Shown here: positions 29,231-64,000 of the stretch, in pieces
Position numbering within the stretch: the first letter of the stretch is position 1
Layout of the letters: each line of letters opens with the position of its first letter
The notes under the pieces: generated by a model
What the model was told of the DNA's origin: nothing
What the model saw: the letters and a program-made list of their open reading frames with translations, nothing else
Databases searched by the model: none
From: Mytilus californianus
Lineage: Eukaryota
Assembly: GCF_021869535.1 (NCBI RefSeq)
Contig: NW_026262667.1
Location: 8,618,001-8,682,000, forward strand
Length of the DNA stretch: 64,000 bases
Direction: 5' to 3'
Position numbers and translations under genes: made by a program

Positions 29231-29329
29231 TATTGTGTATTCTAACAGCTTAATTGCATGCGCTGATTTTTGAATCGGGGTCCGTTTTGTCATGTGAATT
29301 TCTCACTTATTATGAGTAATATGATAACT

Positions 29330-30180
29330 ATATTTGGTATATGGGTTCCTTGCAACGTCTACATGTCCGTCAGACAGAGTTCACCTGACCTCAACCTCAT
29401 TTAATGGATCAGTGATCAAGGTTTAAATTTCGTGTTTAGGTCTATTTCTCAAATACTATAAGCAGAAGGTCAGCTATATTTGGTGTATGGAATGATTGTA
29501 ATGGGCACATGTCAGTCTGGCAGGTATCATCTGAACTTGACCTCATTTTCATGGTCCATTGGTCAATGTTAAGTTTTGTGTTTTTGTCTGTTTTTCAAGT
29601 ACTATAAGCAATAGGTCAAATATATTTGGTGTATGGAAAGATTGTAAGGTGTACATGTCTGTCTGGAAGGTATAATCTGACCTTGACCTAATTTTTATGG
29701 TTCATAATCATTGGTCAATGTTAAGTTTTTGTGTATTTGTCTGTTTTCCAAGTACTATAAGCAATAGGTCAGCTATATTTGGTGTATGGATAAGTTGGTA
29801 TGGAATAATTGTAAGGTGCACATGTCTGTCTGGCAGATATCATCTGACCTTGACCTCACATTTATGGTTCATTGGTCAATGTTAAGTTTTTGTGTTTTTG
29901 TCTGTTTTTCAAGTACTATAAGCAATAGGTCAACTATATTTAGTGTATGGAATGATTGTAAGGTGTACAAGTCTGTCTGGAAGGTATCATCTGACCTTGA
30001 TCTAATTTTTATGGTTCATTGGTCAATATTAAGTTTTTGTGTTTTTGTCTGTTTTCCAAGTACTATAAGCAATAGGTCAGCTATATTTGGTGTATGGAAT
30101 AATTGTAAGGTGCACATGTCTGTCTGTCTTGACCTCACATTTATGGTTCATTGGTCAATGTTAAGTATTTGTGTTTTGGT
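29330..30180. repeat. Tandem ~147-bp units (gcaataggtcaactatatttggtgtatggaatgattgtaagg...); related degenerate units at ~42050-42440
   Basis: gcaataggtc anchors at 29608, 29761, 29922 and 30069. Confidence 0.8.
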
Positions 30181-30184
30181 CTGT

Positions 30185-32235
30185 TTTTATACGACCGCAA
30201 AAAAATTTTGAGGTCGTATATTGGTATGACGTTGGCATCATGATCGTCGTCCGAAGACACATTGGTTTTCGCACTCTAACTTTAGTTTAAGTTAATGGAT
30301 CTCTATGAAATTTTACCATAAGGTTCAATACCACAAAAGGAAGGTTGGGAATGATTTTGGGGGTTATGGTACCAACAGTTAAGGAATAAGGGGCCAAAAA
30401 TAAGCATTTTTGTAACTTCCAGACAAAACTTGTGAGTTAGTGTATGGATCTCTCTGACATTGTACAAAAAGGTTCCATATCTCAAAGGGAATGCTGGGAT
30501 TGATTTTGGGGGAAATTGCCTCAAAATTTTAGGAATTAGGGGCCAAAAAAGGGGCAAAAAACAAGCATTTTTATATGGACAAATTCTTTAGTACAAAACA
30601 TAATTTAAAGCAGTGTAAGGGAGATAAATCAAATACATCATTTGAATTACCTCCCTTACACTGCTTTTAAATTATGTATAAAGTAATGGTTAATGAACAA
30701 TTAAGACAATTTAAAACAGTGTAAGGGAGGTAATCCACATACAACGTTTTGATTACTTCCCTTACACTGCTTTTAAATTATGTTTAAAGAAATGCATATT
30801 TATAAAGGAAGACCAGTAAAAATATCTGCAAATGTTGCATCTTTTTTTTTTTACAAAAAAATCCATATGAAATATTTGACACCATATTTTAAATTCTATT
30901 ATAAAATAGACTAAGTTAGCACTATGGTAAATTTAAATGGGTAATTATGGTTGCAAATTCCATTGGAAATTTGAATTGAGATTATGACCATATCTTGAGG
31001 GAAAGATTTTTTGGGGGAAAAGGGGGGGGGGGGGGTAAAAAGAAATTGTGGGGGTCAATTTTTTCTCATTTCAGATTTAAAAAGAATTATTCTTCAAATA
31101 TTATTTTTTTTTTCAAATTTCAAATATTGAAAAATTTCAAGAAGTAATCTTTAATTGCACAGTATGGCGCATTAGATTTGTAAAATCTTTGACCACATTT
31201 ATTTATTTGTTATGCCATATCTGAACTTGTATTTAGATTTTTAATTTTGGGTCCAGTTTTCATATTGGTCTACATTAAGGTCTAAAGGGTCCAAAATTAA
31301 ACTTAGTTCGATTTTAACAAAATTGAATATATGGGGTTCTTTGATATGCTGAATCTAAACATGTATTTAGATTTTTGATTTCGGGCCCAGTTTTCAAGTT
31401 GGTCCAAATTGGGGATCAAAATTAAACTTTGTTTGATTTCAACAAAAATTGAATATATGGGGTTCTTTGATATGCTGAATCTTACCATGTATTTAGATTT
31501 TTTATTTGTGGGCCCTGCTATCAAATTGGTTCATATTGAGGTCACAAGGGTCCAAAATTAAACTTTGTTTTATTTCATCAAAAATTGAGATATTGGGGTT
31601 CTTTGATATGCCAAATCTAACCTGTATTTAGATTTTTAATTTTGGGTCCAGTTTTCAAATTGGTCTACATTAAGGTCCAAAGGGTCCAAAATTAAACTTA
31701 GTTTGATTTTAACAAAAATTGAATTCTTGGGGTTCTTTGATATGCTGAATCTAAACATGTGTTTAGATTTTTGATTATGGGCCCAGTTTTCAAGTTGGTC
31801 CAAGTTGGGGTCCAAAATTAAACTTTGTTTGATTTCAACAAAAAATGAATATATGGGGTTCTTTGATATGCTGAATCTAACCATGTATTTTGATTTTTGG
31901 GCCCCGTTATCAAATTGGTCCACATTGAGGTCAAAAGGGTCCAAAATTAAACTTTGTTTGATTTCATCAAAAATTGAATCTTTGGATTCTTTGATATGCT
32001 GAATCTAACCATGTATTTAGATTTTGGATATTGGACCATAATAGGTAAATTAAAAAATTTTAAGTTCTTAGACCACATTCATTCTGTGTCAGAAACCTAT
32101 GCTGTGTCAAATATTTAATCACAATCCAAATTCAGAGCTGTATCAAACTTGAATGTTGTGTCCATACTTGCCCCAACTGTTCAGGGTTCGACCTCTGCGG
32201 TCGTATCAAGCTGCGCCCAGCGGAGCATTTTATTT
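30185..32235. mobile_element. Helentron/HINE-like element (~2 kb) with subterminal inverted repeats, twin palindromes and a central higher-order tandem array
   Basis: Perfect 11-bp inverted repeat atacgaccgca (30189-30199) / tgcggtcgtat (32196-32206). Terminal hairpin atacgacc...ggtcgtat. ~130-bp units from 31200 to 32040. Confidence 0.75.
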
Positions 32236-35013: not shown

Positions 35014-37500
35014 AAAAGAGAGATGAAAGATACCAAAGGGAATTCAAACTCATTGTCGAAAATAAACTGACAACGCCATGGCAAAGTAAAATAGACCAAA
35101 AGACAAACAACAGTATACAATACACAGCATAGAAAACTATTAAAGACTGGTCAACACAAACCACACTAAAAACCGGGGTGATCTCAGGTGTAAGCAGATC
35201 CTGCTCCACATGTAGCACCGTCGTGTAGCTCATGTAAGTACAAACCCGTGATAAGTCTTATTCAGTAGGTCATATTTGAGGAAAAGGAGGACGTGATTGT
35301 GGTTACGACGATGTTCCTGATGAAGGTAAATCTTCGTCCATAAAATTTTCGTAGGGATGATTTCGACTTCACCACTTGGAAGTCTTGGTTTAAAAGCTTC
35401 CTCGTGAGCAGCAACACTCTACCAAGGAATCATGATAGAAAACGCAAACCCTGGAATATCGTATCAACTGGGAGATATATACTCCATATGCAGGCGCTGT
35501 TGGAATGTTGCTACATAGAAATGGAAAGTTCACAATTGGGAAGCTGATATCATCTCTCTTGTTGTAAAGTTTTGTTCTCAACAGACCCTCATTGTCAATT
35601 TCTAGATGTAAGTCAAGATATGAGGCAGACTTAACTGTATCTGTTGTATCCTTTATTTCAAGTTGATGGGATAGATAGGTTCAATAGTCTCCAAACTTTA
35701 TAAATTATTTAGTAAGAGGGCATCATCTTTTTAGCGGAAAGTGAAGTTAAAGGATAATGCTAGCTCTTTTTCATTCTTCATAAGAAGGTCCTGTATGAAG
35801 TTAGTCTCATATGAATAAAGGAACAAGTCGACAAGAAGAGGAACACACTTGGTTCCCTTGGGAATGCCGATTGTTTGTTGAAAAACACGTCCTCCAAACG
35901 TAACAAATATGTTGTGAATCAAGGAATCAGGCATGTTGATAATGTCACTAGACAATTTCAGAGAATTTTTTGTTTGGACTCAGAAGTACGATTTTTTCTT
36001 CCCTAGGACAAGATATTTGTATCTACGTTGGCCATTCTTTTTTATAAAAAATTTGTCTTTTAGTTTGAAATGGGGAATACTTGTGTAAAGTGTAGAAAAG
36101 TTAAATTTTTTAATACTATTGCCAGATGAAAGAGTTTTAGATTGTATGTTCTCTAACAGATCTTTGGATTTTTTTAGTATCCACATCTAATTCACGCCGC
36201 CTCTAGAGTATGTAATTTCACTATAACTTTAAGGCCCGGCTTTGATTGCTGATAAAATTTGTTAATAATTTAGAAACAGGTTTCGTGGAGCACTTGAATT
36301 GATTGATTGATTGGTCTTTAACGCCACTTTCAGTACCTTTGTGCTATTTCTTGGCGGTCAGTTTTATTGGTGGAGGAAGCCAGACTGCCCGGAGAAAACC
36401 ATTGACCTTCGGTAGGACAAATGACAATCCTAGTCAATTAAGATTGGCGTCGAGCGCACCTACCGCGTGCGGGATTCGAACTCACAACCTCAGTGTGGAC
36501 AGGCTAGTGATACAGTAGTTTGACTACTTAGACCACTCGGCCACCGAGGTCCCTGGAGCACTTGTAAGACCAAGCAATATAACGTTGTTTGTAAGGCTAC
36601 TTATATAATTTAGGTATCCAATACAGCGAATGAAGATCAAGTTCTTTATCCTTGGTTGAAATTCCAAAGGAACATATAAAAGACCTATGATTATCCAGGA
36701 TTTCCTCCTTAGTAAGTGTCGTTGGCTTATATGTTGAGGTTCCAAATAAATTGTCAATACCTATTTCATTCATCAAGCAGTCTATGTAATGTGATTCACA
36801 CACAAAAACGATGTTGTTTGGGGCTTTATCTGCGGGACAACAACACATTTGTCATGGAAGTAGGGTAGGCCAGGTTCTTTGCAACATTTGGGTCTTTAAA
36901 GATTGATGTAGCATATGTATTCATAGACCCATTCAGTTTTTTTAATTTTGATTTGTATGAACGACCTCACAGCCATAATCCATTCGGAAAGAGTATCTAC
37001 GTCTTCTCGCGTTTAATCCATTGCCTGGCATAATCCTCGGCTGAATCTATCTGTATTTCAAAGTTGTGTTTCCGATTGATGGATTTAGGCTCACGATATT
37101 TCGAGCCTTTGTATAGCACATTTTGCAGAGAAGTGTTATTGACAATGTTTATGTCACCAATAATAACGTGGTCAGTCGGATTATGTATGAAAGGGGAACT
37201 AGCGCAGGTGCAATCAAGAGGTTTAGACTTGAAGTCGTCAATATTGAGATCCTGCAACACGTGTTTGTAATTGGAAATTTTAGTTGCAATTGGTTTGGTA
37301 TAGGTTTAAGAAATGATAGGTACAGGCTGATTTTTAAAATAGGGAGGTATTTTCGAGTGAACTTATTTATGACGAAGGATATTGCCCAAGTTAATGGCAT
37401 CAAGACCTTTGTTGGCAAAGGAAATTTTAGAAAGGATCTTTTCTCCTCTTCATCTTTTCCAAATGTCTGTGACTAGCAATACCCGAGATGATAGCTGTAA
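35014..37500 (-). mobile_element. 5'-truncated, decayed Penelope-like retroelement (RT + 3' tail)
   Basis: Minus-strand fragments FANKGLDAINLGNIL, CTCASSPF...DHVIIGDINIV, PADKAPNNIVFVC, LYWIPKL, FSTLYTSIPH, QTIGIPKGTKCVPLLVDLFLYSYE, LYNKRDDISFPIVNFPFLCSNIP..PAYGVYISQLIRY. Many stops and frameshifts. Confidence 0.8.
36297..36553 (-). mobile_element. Full-length tRNA-derived SINE with V-domain-like core, inserted in the Penelope-like ORF
   Basis: Head gggacctcggTGGCCGAGTGGtctaagtag; B-box GTTCGAATCC; core ggttttctccgggcagtctggcttcctccacc; (TCAA)n tail. 11-bp TSD tggagcacttg at 36286-36296 and 36554-36564. Confidence 0.9.
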
Positions 37501-41128: not shown

Positions 41129-42454
41129 ATCTATTTATTTTGTGTATCTGAGGAAGCTACCATCTGGGAAAAAATGTCTACAGTGTGACCGTTTCCAATT
41201 GTTTTGATAAAGGCACATAGAGTTTGTCTGAATGAGTTCAAATGAATGTTACTGAAATTGGAGACGCTTGTATTTTAAACTCATCAATCGAATTAATACA
41301 AAGGCCACAAATTATATTTTTTTACATTTCATTGACATGCTTCATGACAGTCTTTATAGATGAAATATTAGTTTCTAGATATTGAATTATATATTTCTTC
41401 ATAACATGTTGATGTTGTTTTTGTCATCATTATGAAATGAGGATTATTTTCCACTTTTTATCCAACCTGAAAATTTTAACGATTATGTCCATATTTGTAA
41501 ATGACTTTTTTCCTTTTTCTTATACACTGCTATTTTTTAAAATTTAGCTTTAATACCTTCAGCCAAATATTTTTTTTTAATCATCTTTTTTTAAATTGTG
41601 TATTACAGTTTATCATAATTTTTTCTATCAGTTATAAAGTTAATCTCTTTGTGTTGATAGGGTGAGCCAAGATGTACATATTAGGAGTTATAAAAGAAAA
41701 TCTTGCCGTTATTTATGAATAATGTACTTGATTTGTATGTATTTATAAGTCTTAAAAATGTTTGTTTATATGTAATGAATAAATGAGAAACAAGATTGTT
41801 ATAAATTGTGTTGACAAGTTGTAGTCATTTCTTTTCCTGTGACTTGTATTGAGTTGAATAGGAATAAAGAGGGTAGCACCTTTGACATGTATGATTCATT
41901 CTTCATGTAATTTAAAGTTGTGTTCTATATCCAAGCACAGTTTTCTGATACTGAGTGACATACAATCAAATAATTTGGTATTATGGACTTTCTCTAGACA
42001 ATAGAGGAATTAAGCAGCCTTCTAGGAAATGAAGATCAAGCTTACTTACTGCCCTGGACGACATTGGCCACAGGTCAAGCTAACAATCAGTTAATGCTTA
42101 TTATACTATACGCAATAGGTCAACTATATTTGATGTATGGAATGATTGTAATGTGTGCATGTCTGTCTGGCAATGGTCATCTGACCTTTATCTCATTTTC
42201 AATATCGGTTAACAATACCACCAGCTTGTTGAACATTCACAAATACTCTTAGCAATAGGTCAACATATTTTGTGTATGGTAAGATTGGTAGGTTTGCATG
42301 TCTGTCAGACAGTGTTCACCTGAGCTTGACCTCATTTTCATGGTTCTTTTTGCATCGTTTACTTTTCATTGTTAGGTCCGGTTCTCAGACACTATATGCA
42401 GCAGATCAACTATATTTTATGCATGGAATACCTGTAATATAATTGTTATAACCA

Positions 42455-56779: not shown

Positions 56780-57335
56780 AAAATGTGAGAGGTTGATCCA
56801 GATACCAATCACAAAAAGAAGATACCAAGGAGACATGCAAAACTCATTAGTCGAAGACAACTCCCTGGAACAAACATTTAAGACGGCGAAAAGACGAACA
56901 AGTACACAGAACACAACTGAGAAAACTAAAGACTGGGCAACACGAACCCAATAAAAACTGGGGATTATCTCAGGTGCTCCGGGAGGGTAAGCAGGTCCTG
57001 CTTTACTAGTGGCACCCGTCATGTTGTCACTAAGACTTTATACATAGCTTCCTCTCTCTGCTAATGATGGCGACTAAAAAGCATTGGTGTTTAGCTGTTA
57101 TTCACTATTATAAACGAGTTTGACATCTTGGACATATCAGAATGTATATGTATTTTCTGGTATACATGCTCTACTGTAACAGAGGGAGATGACACCAAAA
57201 AAGGCAAACAAAAACCACAAGTCAGATAACACCCATGGCAAAACGAAAAAAGACGAAGCGACAAACAAAGACAATCTAGATCCCACAAAAGTCCGGGAGT
57301 GAACACATGTTCGGAAGGGGAATCAGTTTTCTGTT
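56780..57335 (-). mobile_element. Two retroelement 3'-tail fragments (~56780-57025 and ~57180-57335)
   Basis: Both resemble the 35014-35260 tail (ataccaaag...aaactcat...ggcaaa...cacaaaa..ccggg). Confidence 0.6.
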
Positions 57336-57884
57336 ACTGCATATAAAACCATCTGACACTAATATTAGAGACATTCTTTCTGGTATTATGGTTATTACAA
57401 CAATATTAAATTGTTTATACTTCACATCTCCTTTTATTCAATTTGATGAATATTGATTTCTTGTCATAAATCCAAATTGTACTTTTAGGGGGAGGGGGAC
57501 TTAGAAGAAATTCTAATCTTACTTTATTTTGCTGCATAACTGGGACTTACTTTCTTGTTTGAACTGACCCTGGATTATTTTACATACTTCAAATCGAAGG
57601 TTGACGAGCCAGATTTGGCTGAGATGATCAGTCTATATCGGAGTATCTTCTAGCTGTTAAGGTTATATAACAAACTCACTATAACATGTAACAGTCTGCT
57701 TTATTTTATGTTCACTAAGCTGTTAGGTTAACCATGAAATTATTTGACCTTAGTTAAGGGATGGGATCCAAGGGAGTGTTTATAAAGGGCAAAATTCAGC
57801 CAAATGTGCCTGAAAATCTCTTTGGTATATTCTGTTTCATTTGTGTATTTCATTTGTATCCTGCTTTGGGGGGGGGGGGGGATA

Positions 57885-58090
57885 GGAGGGGGATAGGAGT
57901 GGTCCTGATCCCGAAATCCTGGGCTTAAAAACCTGCCGGGAATCCCGAGGTCCCGAATTTAAAAAAAATTAAATCCCGACATCCCGAAATTCGAAAAAAA
58001 GAATTCCCGGATCCCGAAAGGATCAATCCCGAAATCCCGAGCTTAAAAACACCCGATCCGAGAGTCCCGGTAAAGGTTCTACCCCCTCTC
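57885..58090. mobile_element. Short MITE with ATCCCGAA internal repeats
   Basis: gagggggatagg.../...ctaccccctctc ends and about ten (a)tcccg(a/g) motifs. Confidence 0.55.
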
Positions 58091-58273
58091 ATGTCTTCCA
58101 TAGGGGGACAGACTATTTCTGGAAAAAGCATTCTGCACACTTCGGTAGATCGGATAGCGGAATCTGCCGAAGTTTGCCGATTATTTAAAGTTGCCACAAC
58201 AAACTGAAAGTAGAAATATCCTGTGGTGTTTATCTTTAAATAGCACTTCAATACACCCAATTACACGTGGAAG

Positions 58274-58291
58274 ATGGGGTCAAAAGTAAAG
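58274..58291 (+). CDS. MTAP: MTAP (S-methyl-5'-thioadenosine phosphorylase) coding exon 1 (MGSKVK)
   Basis: gaagATGG...AAG|gtaaga, phase 0. Joins IGIIGG at the position equivalent to human AVK|IGIIGG. Confidence 0.75.
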
Positions 58292-58990
58292 GTAAGAAAA
58301 TAAGACTATGTTGGTGGACAAATTTTTTTAATATTATTTTGGCTTATGCAGAACTGAATGCAGGTTTAAAGTTAGAATGAATTGTCAGAAAACACTTTTT
58401 AAAAGGTTTATCTTTATTAAAATGGCCGACAAGACCTAGATTATATAATATTGAAGTACATTTTATGTTTTAGAAAATTAAAAAGTTGACTGGCTTTTGT
58501 TGTGGTTATTTTTGTGGTTATGAATATGATTGAAAGGGGAAGACATCTTAAAATTCCAAGAGAAGAAAGCCTGTAATAATGGAGAAATTGAAGATGAACA
58601 TTTAATGTAGAATGAAGAATGTAATAGATTTACCTCAAAACGAGTAATATTAGAAAATAAAATAAATGATATATTTAAAATACAACGTAACATTAACAAT
58701 GTTGAAAAATATCTCTAATGGTAAACAATAGCTCAGCATTATTACTTAGACTGTCTTCATCTTTCATATCAGAGTGTCTAAATAAAGTCATTAAAGAAAA
58801 AGTGGATTAATATGATATATTAATATGTAACTTTTCATTCTATCATGTCAATTAATATAATATTGCAATAGGTCTTAACCATTAATTGTTAATGAGTTTG
58901 TGCCAATAAAATATTTGTATTTGTATTTTAACACTTATGTAGCAATGAAATAAATATGTCAAACAAAACCAAGAAAAGTTGTTAATTAAC

Positions 58991-59451
58991 GAGGGTGGTA
59001 AAGGGTTATTTTCGTGTAACGTGATCACCGTTTTTTATTTCACGTTCAACGTGTTTTTACTTTTTTATTCAACGTTCAGTCGTGCAAGACAGGTGCCTCG
59101 TTCAACGTGTTCTGCTTATTTAATTTTACGTGCATCGTGATTTTCAAATGCTTATTTTGCGTGCTCGGTATTTTTCTAATAAAATTCAAACACTTGGCAG
59201 GGATCGTCATGAAATACTTTTCAAGTTAAAAGCCGTAAACCATTTACATCATCAATGTGTATACTAAATCGGGAATAACAAGTAAAACATAGAGTTTATA
59301 TATACAAGAAGACAGTGACTCAGTCACAAAAGGTTCACAACAGTCTTTATTTTTCGTGCAACGTTCATGACAGAAATTATTTCACGTTCAACGTGAAATT
59401 ATGTCTTATTTCACGTTTTTTCCGTGCAAGCACCCCGTCTTTACCACCCTC
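58991..59451. mobile_element. MITE with 13-bp TIRs GAGGGTGGTAAAG (Sola-like termini)
   Basis: gagggtggtaaag at 58991 and ctttaccaccctc ending 59451; internal tttcacgttcaacgtg repeats. TSD not matched. Confidence 0.65.
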
Positions 59452-60129
59452 ATGAACATGTACCTAGGTAATTTTATTACAATTTGAGGCAGACAAGAAG
59501 CCTGAAAATGCCCAGTGTTTACATTTGACTCCTGAAACATACATATGACATCAGCTTGTTTAGTTGTCAATGACGATAACATCATTTCGCAGAATTTCCA
59601 TTTTATGAAATTTTACACTGAAAAATTAACTAAATTGGACTGATTTGTTTATTTTGCATTAGAATAGAGATAACCGTATTGTATTCAAAGCTTGGCCAAT
59701 GTAAAACGTGGGTTTTACTGTCCAAATTTGGTATACCTGGTCGTATAAATATTTGAGATAGGTGGAACAGCCTATTTTGTGTATTAAAGCGCTTGCACTA
59801 AAAGTAGATATACTGTAATTATACTTGTTGGAGATATGTAGGTTTTCATATTAGAATATTAATTATATACCAGTATTTTGAAGTAATTAGAAAATTTAAC
59901 TCCCATTAAAGCTACTAGTCCAAGTAATCTTTCAGAGGAATTGTTATCATTTTTGACACACTATGGTACTTAAAGCAAAATATTTTCATGATTTGTATCA
60001 AATCTTTGAAATAATGTCAGGAGAAGGACAAATTTCCATATGAAATTGTGTCCATATACAGACAATGTTTCATAGATAGATAGTATGAAATTTTGTCTTG
60101 TTCAAGGGAGGTTATCTAAGGTTACATAT

Positions 60130-60230
60130 AGTGTATATTACTTACCAAAACACATTACTTGTAATGCAAGACTTTTTGCTGATGATTGTTCATTACAGAG
60201 AAATGTAAAAAATAGTTCAGATATTGTATT
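60130..60230 (+). mobile_element. Small LINE RT relic
   Basis: LPKHITCNARLFADDCSL contains the non-LTR RT FADD motif. Confidence 0.45.
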
Positions 60231-60396
60231 TTAGCATTTTAAGAGAGGGTCAAATATATTTGCATGCATGTGAATTTTGTAATGAGGTCGCATCCCATTC
60301 AAAAGAAGGTCAATATGACATACATTTCATGTCTGCGTGTCTCTTGTGTTTGTATAGATTACAATTGATATTTATATGTAGAGCATATGATTACAG

Positions 60397-60483
60397 ATAG
60401 GCATCATTGGAGGATCTGGGCTATCTAAACCAGATATATTAAAAGGGGGACAGGAAAAGGAAGTCATCACACCTTTTGGGAAG
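60397..60483 (+). CDS. MTAP: MTAP coding exon 2
   Basis: ttacag|ATA...AAG|gtaaga, 87 nt. IGIIGGSGLSKPDILKGGQEKEVITPFGK vs human [29 protein letters not shown]. Confidence 0.92.
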
Positions 60484-60571
60484 GTAAGATGTTTGGCCTT
60501 TATGATTATCTTCTTACATTGCAGTACAAATTTATAAGTAACACAATGTTCATTATCACAAAAATTGATTT

Positions 60572-62850
60572 GGGCCTCAATGGCTGAGTGGTCTAAGTAG
60601 TTCTCAGTGGTTGAGTAGTCTAAGTAGTCCTCAGTGGCTAAGTAGTTCTCAGTGGCCAAGTGATCTAATAGTTCTCAGTGACCGAGTGGTCTAAGTAGTT
60701 CTCAGTGGCTGAGTGCAGTGAGTGGTCTAATTAGTTCTCAGTGGCTGAGTGGTCTATGTAGTTCTCAGTGGCCGAGTGGTCTATGTAGTTCTCAGTGGCC
60801 TAGTGGTCTAAGTAGTTCTCAGTGGCTGAGTGCAGTGAGTGGTCTAAGTAGTTCTCAGTGGCTGAGTGGTCTATGTAGTTCTCAGTTGTTGAGTGGTCTA
60901 AGTAGTTCTCAGTGGCTGAGTGCTCTAAGTAGTCCTCAGTGCCTGAGTGGTCTTAGTAGTTCTCAGTGGCTGAGTGGTCTAAGTAGTTCTCAGTGGCTGA
61001 GTGGTCTAAGTAGTTCTCAGTGGTTGAGTGGTCTAAGTAGTCCTCAGTGGCTGAGTGGTCTAAGTAGTCCTCAGTGGCTGAGTGGTCTAAGTAGTGCTCA
61101 GTGACTGAGTGGTCTATGTAGTTCTCAGTGGCTGAGTGGTCTAAGTAGTTCTCAGTGGCTGAGTGGTCTAAGTAGTTCTCAGTGGCTGAGTGGTCTAAAT
61201 AGTCCTCAGTGGCTGAGTGGTCTAAGTAGTTCTCAGTGGCTGAGTGGTCTAAGTAGTTCTCAGTGGCTGAGTGGTCTAAGTAGTTTTCAGTGGCTGAGTG
61301 TTCTAAGTAGTTCTCAGTGGCTGAGTGGTCTAAGTAGTTCTCAGTGGCTGATTGGTCTAAGTAGTTCTCAGTGGCTGAGTGGTCTAAGAAGTTCCCAGTG
61401 GCTGAGTGGTTTAAGTAGTTCTCAGTGGCTGAGTGGTCTAAGTAGTTCTCAGTGGCTGAGTGGTCTAAGTAGTTCTCAGTGGCTGAGTGGTCTAAGTAGT
61501 CCTCAGTGGCTGGGTGGTCTAAGTAGTTCTCAGTGGCTGAGTGGACTAAGTAGTTCTCAGTGGCCGAGTGGTCTAAGTAGTTCTCAGTGGTTGAGTGGTC
61601 TAAGTAGTCCTCAGTGGCTGAGTGGTCTAAGTAGTCCTCAGTGGCTGAGTGGTCTAAGTGGTTCTCAGTGGCTGAGTGTTCTAAGTAGTTCTCAGTGGCT
61701 GAGTGGTCTAAGTAGTTCTCAGTGGTTGAGTTGTCTAAGTAGTTCTCAGTGGCTGAGTGTTCTATGTAGTTCTCAGTGGCTGAGTGGTCTAAGTAGGTCT
61801 CAGTGACTGAGTGGTCTAAGTAGTCTTTAGTGGCTGAGTGGTCTAAGTAGTTCTCAGTGGCTGAGTGGTCTAAGTAGTTCCCAGTGGCTGAGTGGTTTAA
61901 GTAGTTCTCAGTGGCTGTCTTCAGTAGCTGAGTGGTCTAAGTAGTTCTCAGTGGCTGAGTGGTCTAAGTAGTTTTCAGTGGCTGAGTGGTCTAAGTAGTT
62001 CTCAGTGGCTGAGTGGTCTAAGTAGTTCTCAGTGACTGAGTGGTCTAAGTAGTTCTCAGTGGCTGAGTGTTCTATGTAGTTCTCAGTGGTTGAGTTGTCT
62101 AAGTAGTTCTCAGTGGCTGAGTGTTCTATGTAGTTCTCAGTGGGTGAGTGGTCTAAGTAGGTCTCAGTGGCTGATTTGTCTAAGTAGTCTTTAGTGGCTG
62201 GGTGGTCTAAGTAGTTCTCAGTGGTTGAGTGGTCTAAGTAGTCCTCAGTGGCTGAGTGGTCTAAGTAGTTTTCAGTGGCCGAGTGATCTATGTAGTTCTC
62301 AGTGGCTGAGTGGTCTAAGTAGTTCTCAGTGGCCGAGTGGTCTAAGTAGTTCTCAGTGGTTGAGTGGTCTAAGTAGTCCTCAGTGGCTGAGTGGTCTAAG
62401 TAGTCCTCAGTGGCTGAGTGGTCTAAGTAGTCCTCAGTGGCTGAGTGGTCTATGTAGTTCTCAGTGGCTGAGTGGTCTAAGTAGTTCTCAGTGGTTGAGT
62501 TGTCTAAGTAGTTCTCAGTGGCTGAGTGGTCTAAGTAGTTCTCAGTGGCTGAGTGGTCTAAGTAGTTCTCAGTGGCTGAGTGGTCTAAGTAGTTCTCAGT
62601 GGTTGAGTGGTCTAAGTTGTTTATCTACGATGATCACTAAAGTATTAATATCAAAGCTGAGATTTTGAGTTTGAACCCTGCTTGTGGCAGGCATGTTAGA
62701 CTCTGATCTTAGTTGATTCAGAATAGGATTGCCAGTTTTCCAGCAGAAATTCAGTGGTTCTTTCCAGCTTCCTCCTTCAACAAGAACTTGCTGACACGAT
62801 ATAGCTAAGAGTGCTGAAAGTGGCATTAAAATACAAACAATCACTCAACT
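60572..62850 (+). repeat. SINE copy whose 5' head is amplified into a ~2 kb satellite of ~75 x 27-bp units (ctcagtggctgagtggtctaagtagtt)
   Basis: The unit equals the head of the SINE at 36297-36553. After the array the SINE continues (gagtttgaaccc B-box, gcttcctcc core, ctgaaagtggcattaaa tail). aaaattgattt(ggg) flanks both sides (60561, 62851). Confidence 0.9.
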
Positions 62851-63323
62851 AAAATTGATTTGGGTCCCAATCAAAAGTACAAGATGGCCACCATAATGTC
62901 CATTGTACAAGGTTTTGAAAAGTCACTTGTGGTAAAAAAAAATGTACATGCCAATTTTTTCTATTTTTCAGCCAATCATCACTGTTTTATTGCTGTTGAT
63001 TATGAATTGTACATTTGAATATGCTATCATAATAATTATAACACAAATGAGCAAAGTTTGGCTTTATTTGATGCTTAAAATGCAATTTTATAATAGAAGA
63101 GAAAGGATATGGGGTGTCCATCCATGACACAAAATCAGGATATGGGGTGTCCATCCATGACACAAAATCATTATATGCACAGCAAAAAATACAAAAAGCA
63201 AAGGAACAGTGCTTTTATTGCTGTTCTTCATCTTTATAGTCTTTTTTGTACCTGTTGATTTTCAAAAGAATAATCATCACCCATTGATATGTTATAAAAA
63301 GATTTTTTTATGTATTTGTTTAG

Positions 63324-63382
63324 CCATCTGATGCTTTAATATGTGGTGAGATAGAGGGAGTACCTTGTGTTTTATTATCCAG
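63324..63382 (+). CDS. MTAP: MTAP coding exon 3 (gene continues beyond the window)
   Basis: tatttgtttag|CCA...CCAG|gtaagt, 59 nt. PSDALICGEIEGVPCVLLSR vs human [20 protein letters not shown]. Confidence 0.92.
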
Positions 63383-64000
63383 GTAAGTATAATTTGTTAA
63401 AACAATGTCAGTTACCTGGGAGAGCAAGAGTGGAAGACTACTTTTACACATAGGTCCTTGCTAACTACAAAAATAGGTTAAACTTTTTAGCATACTTGCC
63501 ATAAAATTGAGCAAAACCCATACTGTTTAGTAAGCTTTTAAAGGCACTTAGATGTCAAAATGTGAAGCAATTCAAAATAGAAAACAAATGGCACGATGTA
63601 AACTTATAACATATAATAAGAGACAATTATGCCAGACATCAACCAATGACAACCACTGGACTACAGGCACCTGGCTTGGGATAGGATCATAAAAAAATGT
63701 GCAGGGTTCAAACATGTTTGTCAGTGCTACTTCCAGTCACTGTAATAGAAAGCTTTATTTGAACTAATATATAGATCATGTTTACCCAGACTAAAATATG
63801 AAATAGTACACCTCTAAAATATTCTGTATAAAGACCTGATAAACAGTATAAGAAATCATGAATTTTTGAAAATTTAATGCCAAAAGTATTGATGGGATGC
63901 AGGAATGTAAGTTTTCAGTAATAGCTGGATAGCAATATATATTTATTTATGTAAATTATGTACAATAACATCAATATTAGAACTTAAAAAGACAATATTC

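What the first reader, a model, noticed from the sequence alone, without database searches (positions are those of the whole stretch)
60561..62864. A satellite born inside a single SINE: ~75 tandem copies of the Pol III A-box head in MTAP intron 2
Seen: the 27-bp unit ctcagTGGCTGAGTGGtctaagtagtt is the 5' head of the SINE family whose intact copy sits at 36297-36553. After ~2 kb of array the rest of that SINE follows (B-box, core, tail), and the whole is bracketed by an 11-14-bp TSD (aaaattgattt(ggg) at 60561 and 62851). So one insertion expanded internally. The array starts ~90 bp after the MTAP exon 2 donor, in sense orientation, and each unit offers a ttctcag acceptor-like site. Inference: a snapshot of SINE-to-satellite conversion, possibly affecting TFIIIC binding or MTAP splicing.
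Basis: partly seen in the sequence, partly recalled or inferred. Interest (0 to 1): 0.7.

Follow-up and report, generated by a model that had tools for sequence, protein, structure and literature searches.

The report
SINE-head minisatellite in mussel MTAP intron
One old SINE retrotransposon copy in intron 2 of a mussel's MTAP gene has blown up its first 27 bases into about 75 tandem copies, a real but ordinary case of a mobile element seeding a minisatellite, and the gene still splices normally.

Summary
Window 60575-62621 is 75 head-to-tail units of 27 bp. A SINE body and tail follow at 62622-62850. The whole element is bracketed by an exact 14-nt direct repeat that 0 of 20,000 shuffles reach. 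With the array collapsed, the element aligns end to end with the dispersed SINE family (more than 4,000 exact head words in the 1.65-Gb genome). It lies in sense in MTAP intron 2, 88 bp after the exon 2 donor, and fills 80% of that intron.

The 27-bp array occurs at this locus only, so it is not a pre-existing dispersed satellite. It is not special either. Other copies of the same family carry independent arrays of other periods (24, 30, 37, 42, 44, 63 bp), including a 44-bp x 73 array of 3.2 kb. Mid-body and tail segments form arrays too, so nothing points to the A box.

RNA reads show normal exon 1-2 and exon 2-3 splicing and no reads in the first 11 units. A contig from a related species crosses the same 5' junction, so the insertion predates that split.

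SINE-derived tandem arrays are already published for squamates and bivalves. Verdict: a new member of a known kind, most likely neutral, of low to moderate interest.

The parts
60397..60486 (+). MTAP exon 2 (30 codons, IGIIGGSGL...TPFGK), donor GT at 60487
   Evidence: Sequence. RNA joint 58289->60395 (GT..AG, 39 reads) and RNA depth 44.8 over the exon. 53 reads run on from 60483 into the exon 3 sequence.
60487..63323 (+). MTAP intron 2, 2,837 bp. The SINE with its array makes up 2,279 bp (80%) of it.
   Evidence: Exon 3 start located at 63324 by the loose-end consensus of the RNA reads. Lengths.
60561..60571 (+). 5' copy of the target-site duplication AAAATTGATTT. The identity continues through GGG to 60574.
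   Evidence: 0 of 20,000 shuffles reach the 14-nt shared word.
60572..60602 (+). SINE 5' end (GGGC) plus the first, slightly deviant unit (CCTCAATGG...)
   Evidence: Alignment with family copies that begin GGG(G/A)CCTCGGTGG. Contigs of an independent individual of species A and of species C cross the 5' junction (60574/60575) and reach 60601-60602 (records 16 and 8).
60575..62621 (+). Array of 75 units of 27 bp (consensus CTCAGTGGCTGAGTGGTCTAAGTAGTT), equal to SINE positions about 5-31 including the A box
   Evidence: Units 1-14 are the most degenerate (mean 3.6 edits) and units 15-45 the most uniform (0.75-1.07). Variant blocks GBA, BA and DE recur at offsets of 12-28 units.
62622..62850 (+). 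Remainder of the SINE: rest of the tRNA-like head with a degenerate B box at 62668-62678, the body, the LINE-type 3' region (CTGAAAGTGGCATTAAA) and a short CAAT-like tail
   Evidence: The collapsed element is 15.9% from a rough family consensus, within the 8.6-19.7% range of 16 other copies.
62851..62861 (+). 3' copy of the target-site duplication AAAATTGATTT (followed by GGG)
63324..63383 (+). MTAP exon 3 (PSDALICGEIEGVPCVLLSR), acceptor AG at 63322-63323, donor GT at 63384
   Evidence: (loose-end consensus).
36296..36553 (-). Unexpanded copy of the same SINE family, flanked by a 10-bp target-site duplication (TGGAGCACTT at 36286-36295 and 36554-36563)

Best explanation
A tRNA-like SINE, about 260 bp long with an A box, a B box, a LINE-type 3' region and a CAAT-type tail, retrotransposed in sense into MTAP intron 2. 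This happened in an ancestor of at least two mussel species and made an 11-bp target-site duplication. Later, a 27-bp segment near its 5' end (positions about 5-31) was duplicated. Replication slippage and unequal exchange, partly in blocks of several units, then amplified it to about 75 copies (2 kb).

The array is a locus-specific minisatellite. It tripled or more the length of the intron and has no visible effect on MTAP splicing.

Shown:
- the structure of the element, its bracketing repeat and its family membership;
- that the 27-bp array sits at a single locus;
- that the same family has expanded independently elsewhere;
- normal splice junctions;
- that a second species shares the 5' junction.

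Inferred:
- the order of events (insertion first, expansion later);
- the slippage and unequal-exchange mechanism;
- neutrality.
For: Array and units.

Bracketing repeat.

Full-length alignment of the collapsed element with 16 family copies, 15.9% from the consensus. The array units are only 6.4% per site from their own consensus, and about 3-4% in the centre, so the array is younger or more homogenised than the element.

Degenerate edges, a uniform centre and recurring multi-unit variant blocks are what unequal exchange predicts.

Each unit carries the 5-bp palindrome CTCAG/CTGAG. Three units fold as single-stranded DNA better than shuffles do (z = -2.8), which is compatible with slipped-strand intermediates.

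The genome search with three units finds the 27-bp array only at C87:8678576-8680621.

The head word occurs 4,159 times against 1 in the control, so the family is dispersed.

Independent arrays in other copies, in other registers:
- 24 bp x 22 followed by a body;
- 30 bp x 3 followed by a body;
- 63 bp x 8.8;
- 37 bp x 3;
- 30 bp x 7;
- 42 bp x 7;
- 44 bp x 73.
Arrays also arise from tail and mid-body motifs.

RNA reads: 39 reads join exon 1 to exon 2, 53 reads continue from exon 2 into exon 3, and depth is zero over 60640-60880.

A 511-nt contig of species C, about 94% identical, runs from 60112 into the first unit at 60601. A contig of a second individual of species A runs from 60358 to 60602. 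Both are, table 8.
Against: No long read spanning the array was available, so the copy number rests on one assembly plus crude word depths.

Those depths give an array-to-single-copy ratio of about 100 in species A, 30-55 in species C and about 13 in species B. They may include other head arrays.

Only the first 11 units could be tested with reads, because the reads tool refuses the full repeat. Cryptic splicing or transcription deeper in the array is therefore not excluded.

No empty or unexpanded allele was seen, so the order 'insertion first, expansion later' is inferred from divergence alone.

The direct repeat continues imperfectly beyond 14 nt (8 of the next 11 positions agree). This could be microhomology at integration or chance.
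Confidence: 0.85

Rival explanations
1. The array was made at the moment of insertion. The LINE reverse transcriptase reached the 5' end of the SINE RNA and switched template back to about position 31 again and again, so the head was copied many times into one cDNA.
For: In several other loci the repeated unit begins at or within a few bases of the SINE's first base: the 44-bp, 37-bp, 30-bp and 24-bp arrays.
Against: Arrays of the same size class also arise from tail and mid-body segments, where this mechanism does not apply. Here the unit lacks the first four bases (GGGC). Recurring multi-unit variant blocks and degenerate edges indicate growth after insertion at the DNA level. Seventy-five consecutive template switches would be unprecedented; that last point rests on my own knowledge.
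Confidence: 0.04
2. A pre-existing 27-bp satellite that happens to resemble a SINE head, or a dispersed satellite family, lies next to a 5'-truncated SINE.
For: None beyond the similarity itself.
Against: The 27-bp array is at one locus only. The first unit is joined to the SINE's GGGC 5' end directly after the target-site duplication, and the last unit runs on in register into the rest of the SINE. One 14-nt repeat brackets the whole.
Confidence: 0.02
3. The array is functional. It would recruit TFIIIC or Pol III through its many A boxes, or modulate MTAP splicing through its ttctcag acceptor-like sites.
For: 44 of 75 units keep a perfect A-box consensus. The array is in sense, 88 bp from a donor, and every unit ends in ...TTCTCAG. 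The insertion has been retained in at least two species.
Against: Splicing from exon 2 to exon 3 is normal (53 reads) and RNA depth is zero over units 3-11. The single B box is degenerate (AGTTTGAACCC), with the conserved C of GTTCGA changed to T. From established knowledge of tRNA-type promoters, TFIIIC binds mainly through the B box. The acceptor-like sites have a short, purine-interrupted pyrimidine tract and upstream AGs (TAAG, GTAG) within 12 nt. Similar arrays elsewhere in the genome have no shared gene context.
Confidence: 0.05
4. Assembly artefact: the long-read assembler inflated or invented the array.
For: Tandem arrays are error-prone in assemblies, and no spanning read was seen here.
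Against: In short-read contigs from an independent individual and from two related species, array words have 13- to 100-fold the single-copy depth, and contigs cross the 5' junction. The array has a structured pattern of variants rather than perfect copies.
Confidence: 0.03

Closest known systems
SINE-derived satellites (sSats) of squamate reptiles (Vassetzky, Kosushkin and Ryskov 2023, Mob DNA 14:21, PMC10702118)
   Same: Both are tandem repeats made of a portion of a tRNA-derived SINE, with a longer terminal unit that continues into the rest of the SINE. Many loci arise independently with different registers, short variable loci stand beside long, more homogeneous ones, and the proposed origin is duplication followed by unequal exchange.
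   Different: The squamate units are 67-215 nt and often become multi-locus families with up to about 1,000 units and a subtelomeric preference. Here the unit is 27 bp and covers only the 5' end with the A box. The array is at one locus, inside a gene intron, and fully bracketed by the target-site duplication.
Tandem-like HCD SINE structures in bivalves, type TSD1-(SINE)n-TSD1 (Martelossi et al. 2024, Mob DNA 15:22, PMC11481361)
   Same: Same animal class and the same architecture: a first unit with a complete 5' head, internal units truncated at both ends, a last unit with the complete tail, and one target-site duplication around everything. These structures are also found in introns. That paper lists a Meta-type SINE family with a tRNA-Ser head shared by Mytilinae. 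ARAGORN at a relaxed threshold calls this family's consensus head tRNA-Ser-like.
   Different: That survey kept only RepeatMasker hits of 150 bp or more, so it counted arrays of near-whole SINEs, 2-15 units long. The authors say fragment-sized units would have been missed. Here the unit is a 27-bp fragment repeated 75 times.
Transposon-derived mini- and satellite DNAs in general, for example the limpet PcH-Sat proposed to derive from a Nin-SINE (PMC11121367), and the reviews PMC6947457 and PMC9659126
   Same: An internal segment of a mobile element is amplified in tandem.
   Different: Those cases are mostly abundant satellites whose founding insertion is no longer visible. Here the founding copy is still intact, with both flanks and its target-site duplication.

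Membership tests
tRNA-derived SINE (non-autonomous non-LTR retrotransposon) | Short dispersed element present in many copies, each with different flanks | tested here: met
   The body query gives 2,118 first-look candidates and 40 scored copies at 69-77% identity. The head 16-mer occurs 4,159 times against 1 in the control.
tRNA-derived SINE (non-autonomous non-LTR retrotransposon) | Target-site duplication flanking the individual copy | tested here: met
   An 11-14-nt repeat at 60561 and 62851, reached by 0 of 20,000 shuffles. The copy at 36296-36553 has its own 10-bp duplication.
tRNA-derived SINE (non-autonomous non-LTR retrotransposon) | Internal Pol III promoter: A box (TRGCNNAGTGG) and B box (GGTTCGANNCC) in a tRNA-like head | tested here: met
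   The family consensus has TGGCCGAGTGG and AGTTCGAACCC about 55 nt apart. This copy has the A box in 44 of 75 units and a degenerate B box with 2 mismatches.
tRNA-derived SINE (non-autonomous non-LTR retrotransposon) | Recognisable homology of the head to a tRNA | tested here: inconclusive
   Rfam finds nothing even at E <= 5. ARAGORN finds nothing at its default setting and calls a tRNA-Ser-like fold on the consensus only at a relaxed threshold.
tRNA-derived SINE (non-autonomous non-LTR retrotransposon) | 3' region and tail shared with a partner LINE | not tested
   A conserved CTGAAAGTGGCATTAAACACC motif and a (CAAT)n-type tail are seen in all copies. No LINE partner was sought.
MetaSINE or other HCD SINE superfamily | Presence of the superfamily's conserved central domain | not testable with these tools
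   No reference consensus sequence is held. The papers give the domains only in figures.
SINE-derived tandem array of type TSD-(partial SINE)n-TSD | Units are a contiguous part of the SINE; the first unit carries the true 5' end, the last runs on into the rest; one duplication flanks all | tested here: met
Satellite DNA in the strict sense | Long arrays at many loci or in heterochromatin, making up a measurable share of the genome | tested here: not met
   The 27-bp array is at one locus of 2 kb. Related arrays elsewhere have other units and are each single-locus.

The most novel reading that the evidence does not exclude
This mussel SINE family would be a habitual seed of minisatellites. My searches turned up roughly twenty candidate loci where head, middle or tail segments of single copies have expanded in different registers, two of them past 2 kb. 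The MTAP-intron array would be an orthologous, still-bracketed example shared by several mussel species with different copy numbers (crude depth ratios of about 100, 30-55 and 13). That would give a datable, locus-by-locus series from a single SINE to a proto-satellite in bivalves, where short-unit SINE-derived arrays have not been surveyed.
Probability: 0.45. Interest if true: 0.4.

Novelty: new member of a known kind. Interest (0 to 1): 0.25.

Why it matters
The founding insertion of a tandem array is rarely still visible. Here the 5' end, the tail and both target-site duplications survive around 75 units, and the same insertion is present in a related species. The locus could therefore serve as a clean marker for timing minisatellite growth, and it is probably a hypervariable intron-length marker in mussels.

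It also shows that published surveys of bivalve SINE arrays, which required units of 150 bp or more, miss a class of short-unit arrays. Beyond that the locus is ordinary. No effect on MTAP or on Pol III is indicated, and the principle that transposon fragments seed tandem repeats is well established.

Tried and rejected
1. Head-specific (A-box-driven) expansion. I searched the genome for two tandem copies of a head 10-mer and found about ten SINE loci. The same test with a tail 10-mer and a mid-body 10-mer found comparable numbers of SINE-derived arrays. The idea is rejected.

Following the tool's own advice I laid the part beside it, 57000-60880. As a result the 3' junction, units 12-75 and array length polymorphism were not examined, and no empty-site allele could be sought.

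3. The contig of species B ends at 60577, three bases into the element (record 24). Whether that reflects a heterozygous empty site or a contig break could not be resolved.

4. Rfam at gathering threshold on the window and at E <= 5 on the intact copy, and ARAGORN at default settings, found no tRNA. Only a relaxed ARAGORN run on a rough consensus suggests tRNA-Ser.

5. An exact-match scan of JGI metagenome contigs for a two-unit junction found nothing.

6. Superfamily assignment (Meta, Deu, V or CORE) could not be tested because no reference sequences were available.

The exons were read one by one by reference.

Full report
**What is there**

The window is part of contig C87 (8,618,001-8,682,000) of a 1.65-Gb, 175-contig genome.

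Tandem Repeats Finder reports a single array at 60576-62621 with period 27, 76 copies and 88% matches. My own tiling gives 75 units from 60575 to 62621. Twenty are identical to the consensus CTCAGTGGCTGAGTGGTCTAAGTAGTT, most others have one or two substitutions, and six have odd lengths.

The first 14 units are the most degenerate, with a mean of 3.6 edits from the consensus. Units 15-45 are the most uniform, at 0.75-1.07 edits. Overall the units differ from their consensus at 6.4% of sites.

Variant units recur in blocks. The triplet of variants I labelled G-B-A stands at units 37-39 and again at 65-67. B-A also stands at 17-18, and D-E / E-D-E at 43-44 and 55-57. So the array grew at least partly by duplication of multi-unit blocks.

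**The founding element**

Directly before the array stand AAAATTGATTT and GGGC. After the last unit come 229 bp (62622-62850), and then AAAATTGATTTGGG again. The shared 14-nt word is reached by none of 20,000 shuffles of the two flanks.

The 229 bp, together with one unit, align over their whole length with the SINE copy at 36296-36553 on the minus strand. That copy has its own 10-bp target-site duplication.

I aligned the element, with its array collapsed to one unit, against 15 other copies fetched from the genome and the window copy. It is collinear from the first base to the CAAT-type tail and lies 15.9% from a rough majority consensus. The other copies range from 8.6 to 19.7%.

Family copies begin GGG(G/A)CCTCGGTGG. 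The GGG of the 14-nt repeat is therefore probably the element's own 5' end, and the target-site duplication proper is 11 bp.

The family is dispersed:
- The body query has 2,118 first-look candidates.
- A 16-nt head word occurs 4,159 times, against once for the reversed control.

The consensus has an A box (TGGCCGAGTGG) and a B box (AGTTCGAACCC). It is called tRNA-Ser-like by ARAGORN only at a relaxed threshold. Rfam and default ARAGORN see no tRNA.

In the expanded copy 44 of 75 units keep a perfect A-box consensus. The only B box is degenerate (AGTTTGAACCC).

**Single locus or dispersed?**

A genome search with three perfect units finds the 27-bp array only at this locus. The three other candidates were weaker matches of 77-82%.

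Those other candidates, and pattern searches for two or three heads in tandem, turned out to be other copies of the same SINE family whose heads have expanded independently in other registers:
- 24 bp x 22 followed by a complete body and tail (C35:41.11 Mb);
- 30 bp x 3 followed by a body (C35:39.68 Mb);
- 63 bp x 8.8 (C2:30.53 Mb);
- 37 bp x 3 (C2:51.48 Mb);
- 30 bp x 7 (C1:137.97 Mb);
- 42 bp x 7 (C121:27.29 Mb);
- 44 bp x 73, a 3.2-kb array that then runs on into a SINE remnant (C106:635,100-638,290).

So the MTAP array is neither unique nor the largest.

**Is the head special?**

Many of these units start at or near the first base of the SINE. I therefore asked whether the head, or its A box, is specially prone to expansion.

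The same tandem-motif search with a conserved tail 10-mer and a conserved mid-body 10-mer found comparable numbers of SINE-derived arrays. Examples are 43 bp x about 19 at C1:99.50 Mb, about 31 bp x 11 at C110:121.77 Mb, 38 bp x about 9 at C132:6.00 Mb, and 46, 45 and 33 bp arrays elsewhere. I judged these SINE-derived from the matched strings alone and did not fetch or align the loci.

Internal expansion is thus a general habit of this family, or of this genome, and not a property of the Pol III promoter.

The unit does contain the 5-bp palindrome CTCAG/CTGAG. Three units fold as single-stranded DNA somewhat better than shuffles (-8.5 kcal/mol, z = -2.8). This would favour slippage but is not needed to explain the array.

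**Gene context and expression**

As it advised, I laid the neighbouring part, 57000-60880, which holds exon 2, the 5' junction and units 1-11.

In a stranded RNA-seq run of the same species:
- 39 reads join an upstream exon ending at about 58289 to the exon beginning after the AG at 60395-60396.
- The exon (60397-60486, reading IGIIGGSGL...TPFGK) has a depth of 45.
- 53 reads continue from its end into a sequence that I located at 63324 (PSDALICGEIEGVPCVLLSR, exon 3, with a GT donor at 63384).

The intron positions match what I recall of the human MTAP exon 2 and exon 3 boundaries. That comparison is from memory and was not tested with a tool.

Intron 2 is therefore 60487-63323, 2,837 bp long. 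The SINE takes 2,279 bp of it and the array 2,047 bp.

RNA depth over 60640-60880 is zero. The few reads on 60572-60603 run on into the ordinary SINE sequence of other copies, as their loose ends show, so they do not come from this locus.

Splicing is thus normal. No acceptor-like site is used in the part that could be tested.

**Other individuals and species**

- A 245-nt contig from another individual of the same species (3 differences) runs from 60358 to 60602.
- A 511-nt contig from a related species C (about 94% identical) runs from 60112 to 60601. Both cross the 5' junction (60574/60575) into the first unit, so the insertion is shared with species C.
- A contig of species B ends at 60577, which I cannot interpret.

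Word depth on the array bins relative to single-copy bins is about 100-fold in species A, 30-55-fold in C and about 13-fold in B. This suggests that all three have an array, of different size. These sums may include other head arrays and are only indicative.

**Mechanism**

The best reading has four steps:
1. One retrotransposition event into the intron.
2. A chance 27-bp duplication near the 5' end.
3. Growth by slippage and unequal exchange.
4. Homogenisation in the centre and decay at the edges.

Supporting this, the array is younger or more homogenised (3-6% divergence) than the element that carries it (16% from the family consensus).

The alternatives each conflict with at least one result above and are scored low:
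- head re-copying by template switching at insertion;
- a pre-existing satellite;
- a functional Pol III or splicing element;
- an assembly artefact.

**Comparison with what is known**

Vassetzky et al. 2023 (PMC10702118) describe SINE-derived satellites in squamates with the same anatomy. Their arrays are made of a SINE portion, have a longer terminal unit reaching the SINE's end, arise at many independent loci in different registers, and are explained by duplication followed by unequal exchange.

Martelossi et al. 2024 (PMC11481361) describe, in bivalves and also in introns, the arrangement TSD1-(SINE)n-TSD1. The first unit has the complete head and the last the complete tail. The authors note that their 150-bp cut-off would miss fragment-sized units.

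A limpet satellite has been proposed to derive from a Nin-SINE (PMC11121367).

The present locus is a clear new example of this known kind, with an unusually short unit and an intact founding copy.

**Verdict**

Novelty: a new member of a known kind. Interest: low to moderate.

Noticed in passing
G000:C106:635100-638290 (L046:101-3290, minus strand): A second kb-scale array from the same SINE family: 44 bp x 73 (3.2 kb, 81% matches). The unit equals SINE positions 1-44. An insertion of about 190 bp interrupts the array, which ends in a SINE remnant.
   Followed up: partly
window 29315-30188 and 42105-42428; also L042:1-1119, L043:2078-2774, L044:1-504: A tandem-repeat family of about 148 bp. 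It lies within about 1 kb of 3 of the 8 fetched head-array loci but in none of 19 ordinary SINE loci. This may mark duplication-prone regions or a composite mobile element.
   Followed up: partly
G000:C1:99497571-99498394, C110:121769159-121769468, C132:6002438-6002776 (not fetched): Arrays built from the tail (43 bp, about 31 bp) and the mid-body (38 bp) of the same SINE family, seen only as pattern matches.
   Followed up: no
window 57780-59860 (MTAP intron 1): About 2 kb of high-copy repeats. Summed word depths run from hundreds up to about 14,000 in all three species, and RNA reads from both strands have loose ends that lead elsewhere. These are probably transcribed transposon copies and not MTAP exons.
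   Followed up: no
window 60453 and 60467 (MTAP exon 2): Two positions where RNA reads are split (G>A in 43 of 62 reads, T>A in 38 of 62). Contigs from other individuals and species carry the alternative base. These are probably ordinary coding polymorphisms.
   Followed up: no
window 63104-63177: A small 33-bp x 2.2 tandem duplication in intron 2, downstream of the SINE.
   Followed up: no
window 60575-60585 vs 62865-62875: Beyond the exact 14-nt repeat, 8 of the next 11 bases agree between the SINE's 5' end and the 3' flank. This may be microhomology used when the cDNA end was joined, or chance.
   Followed up: no
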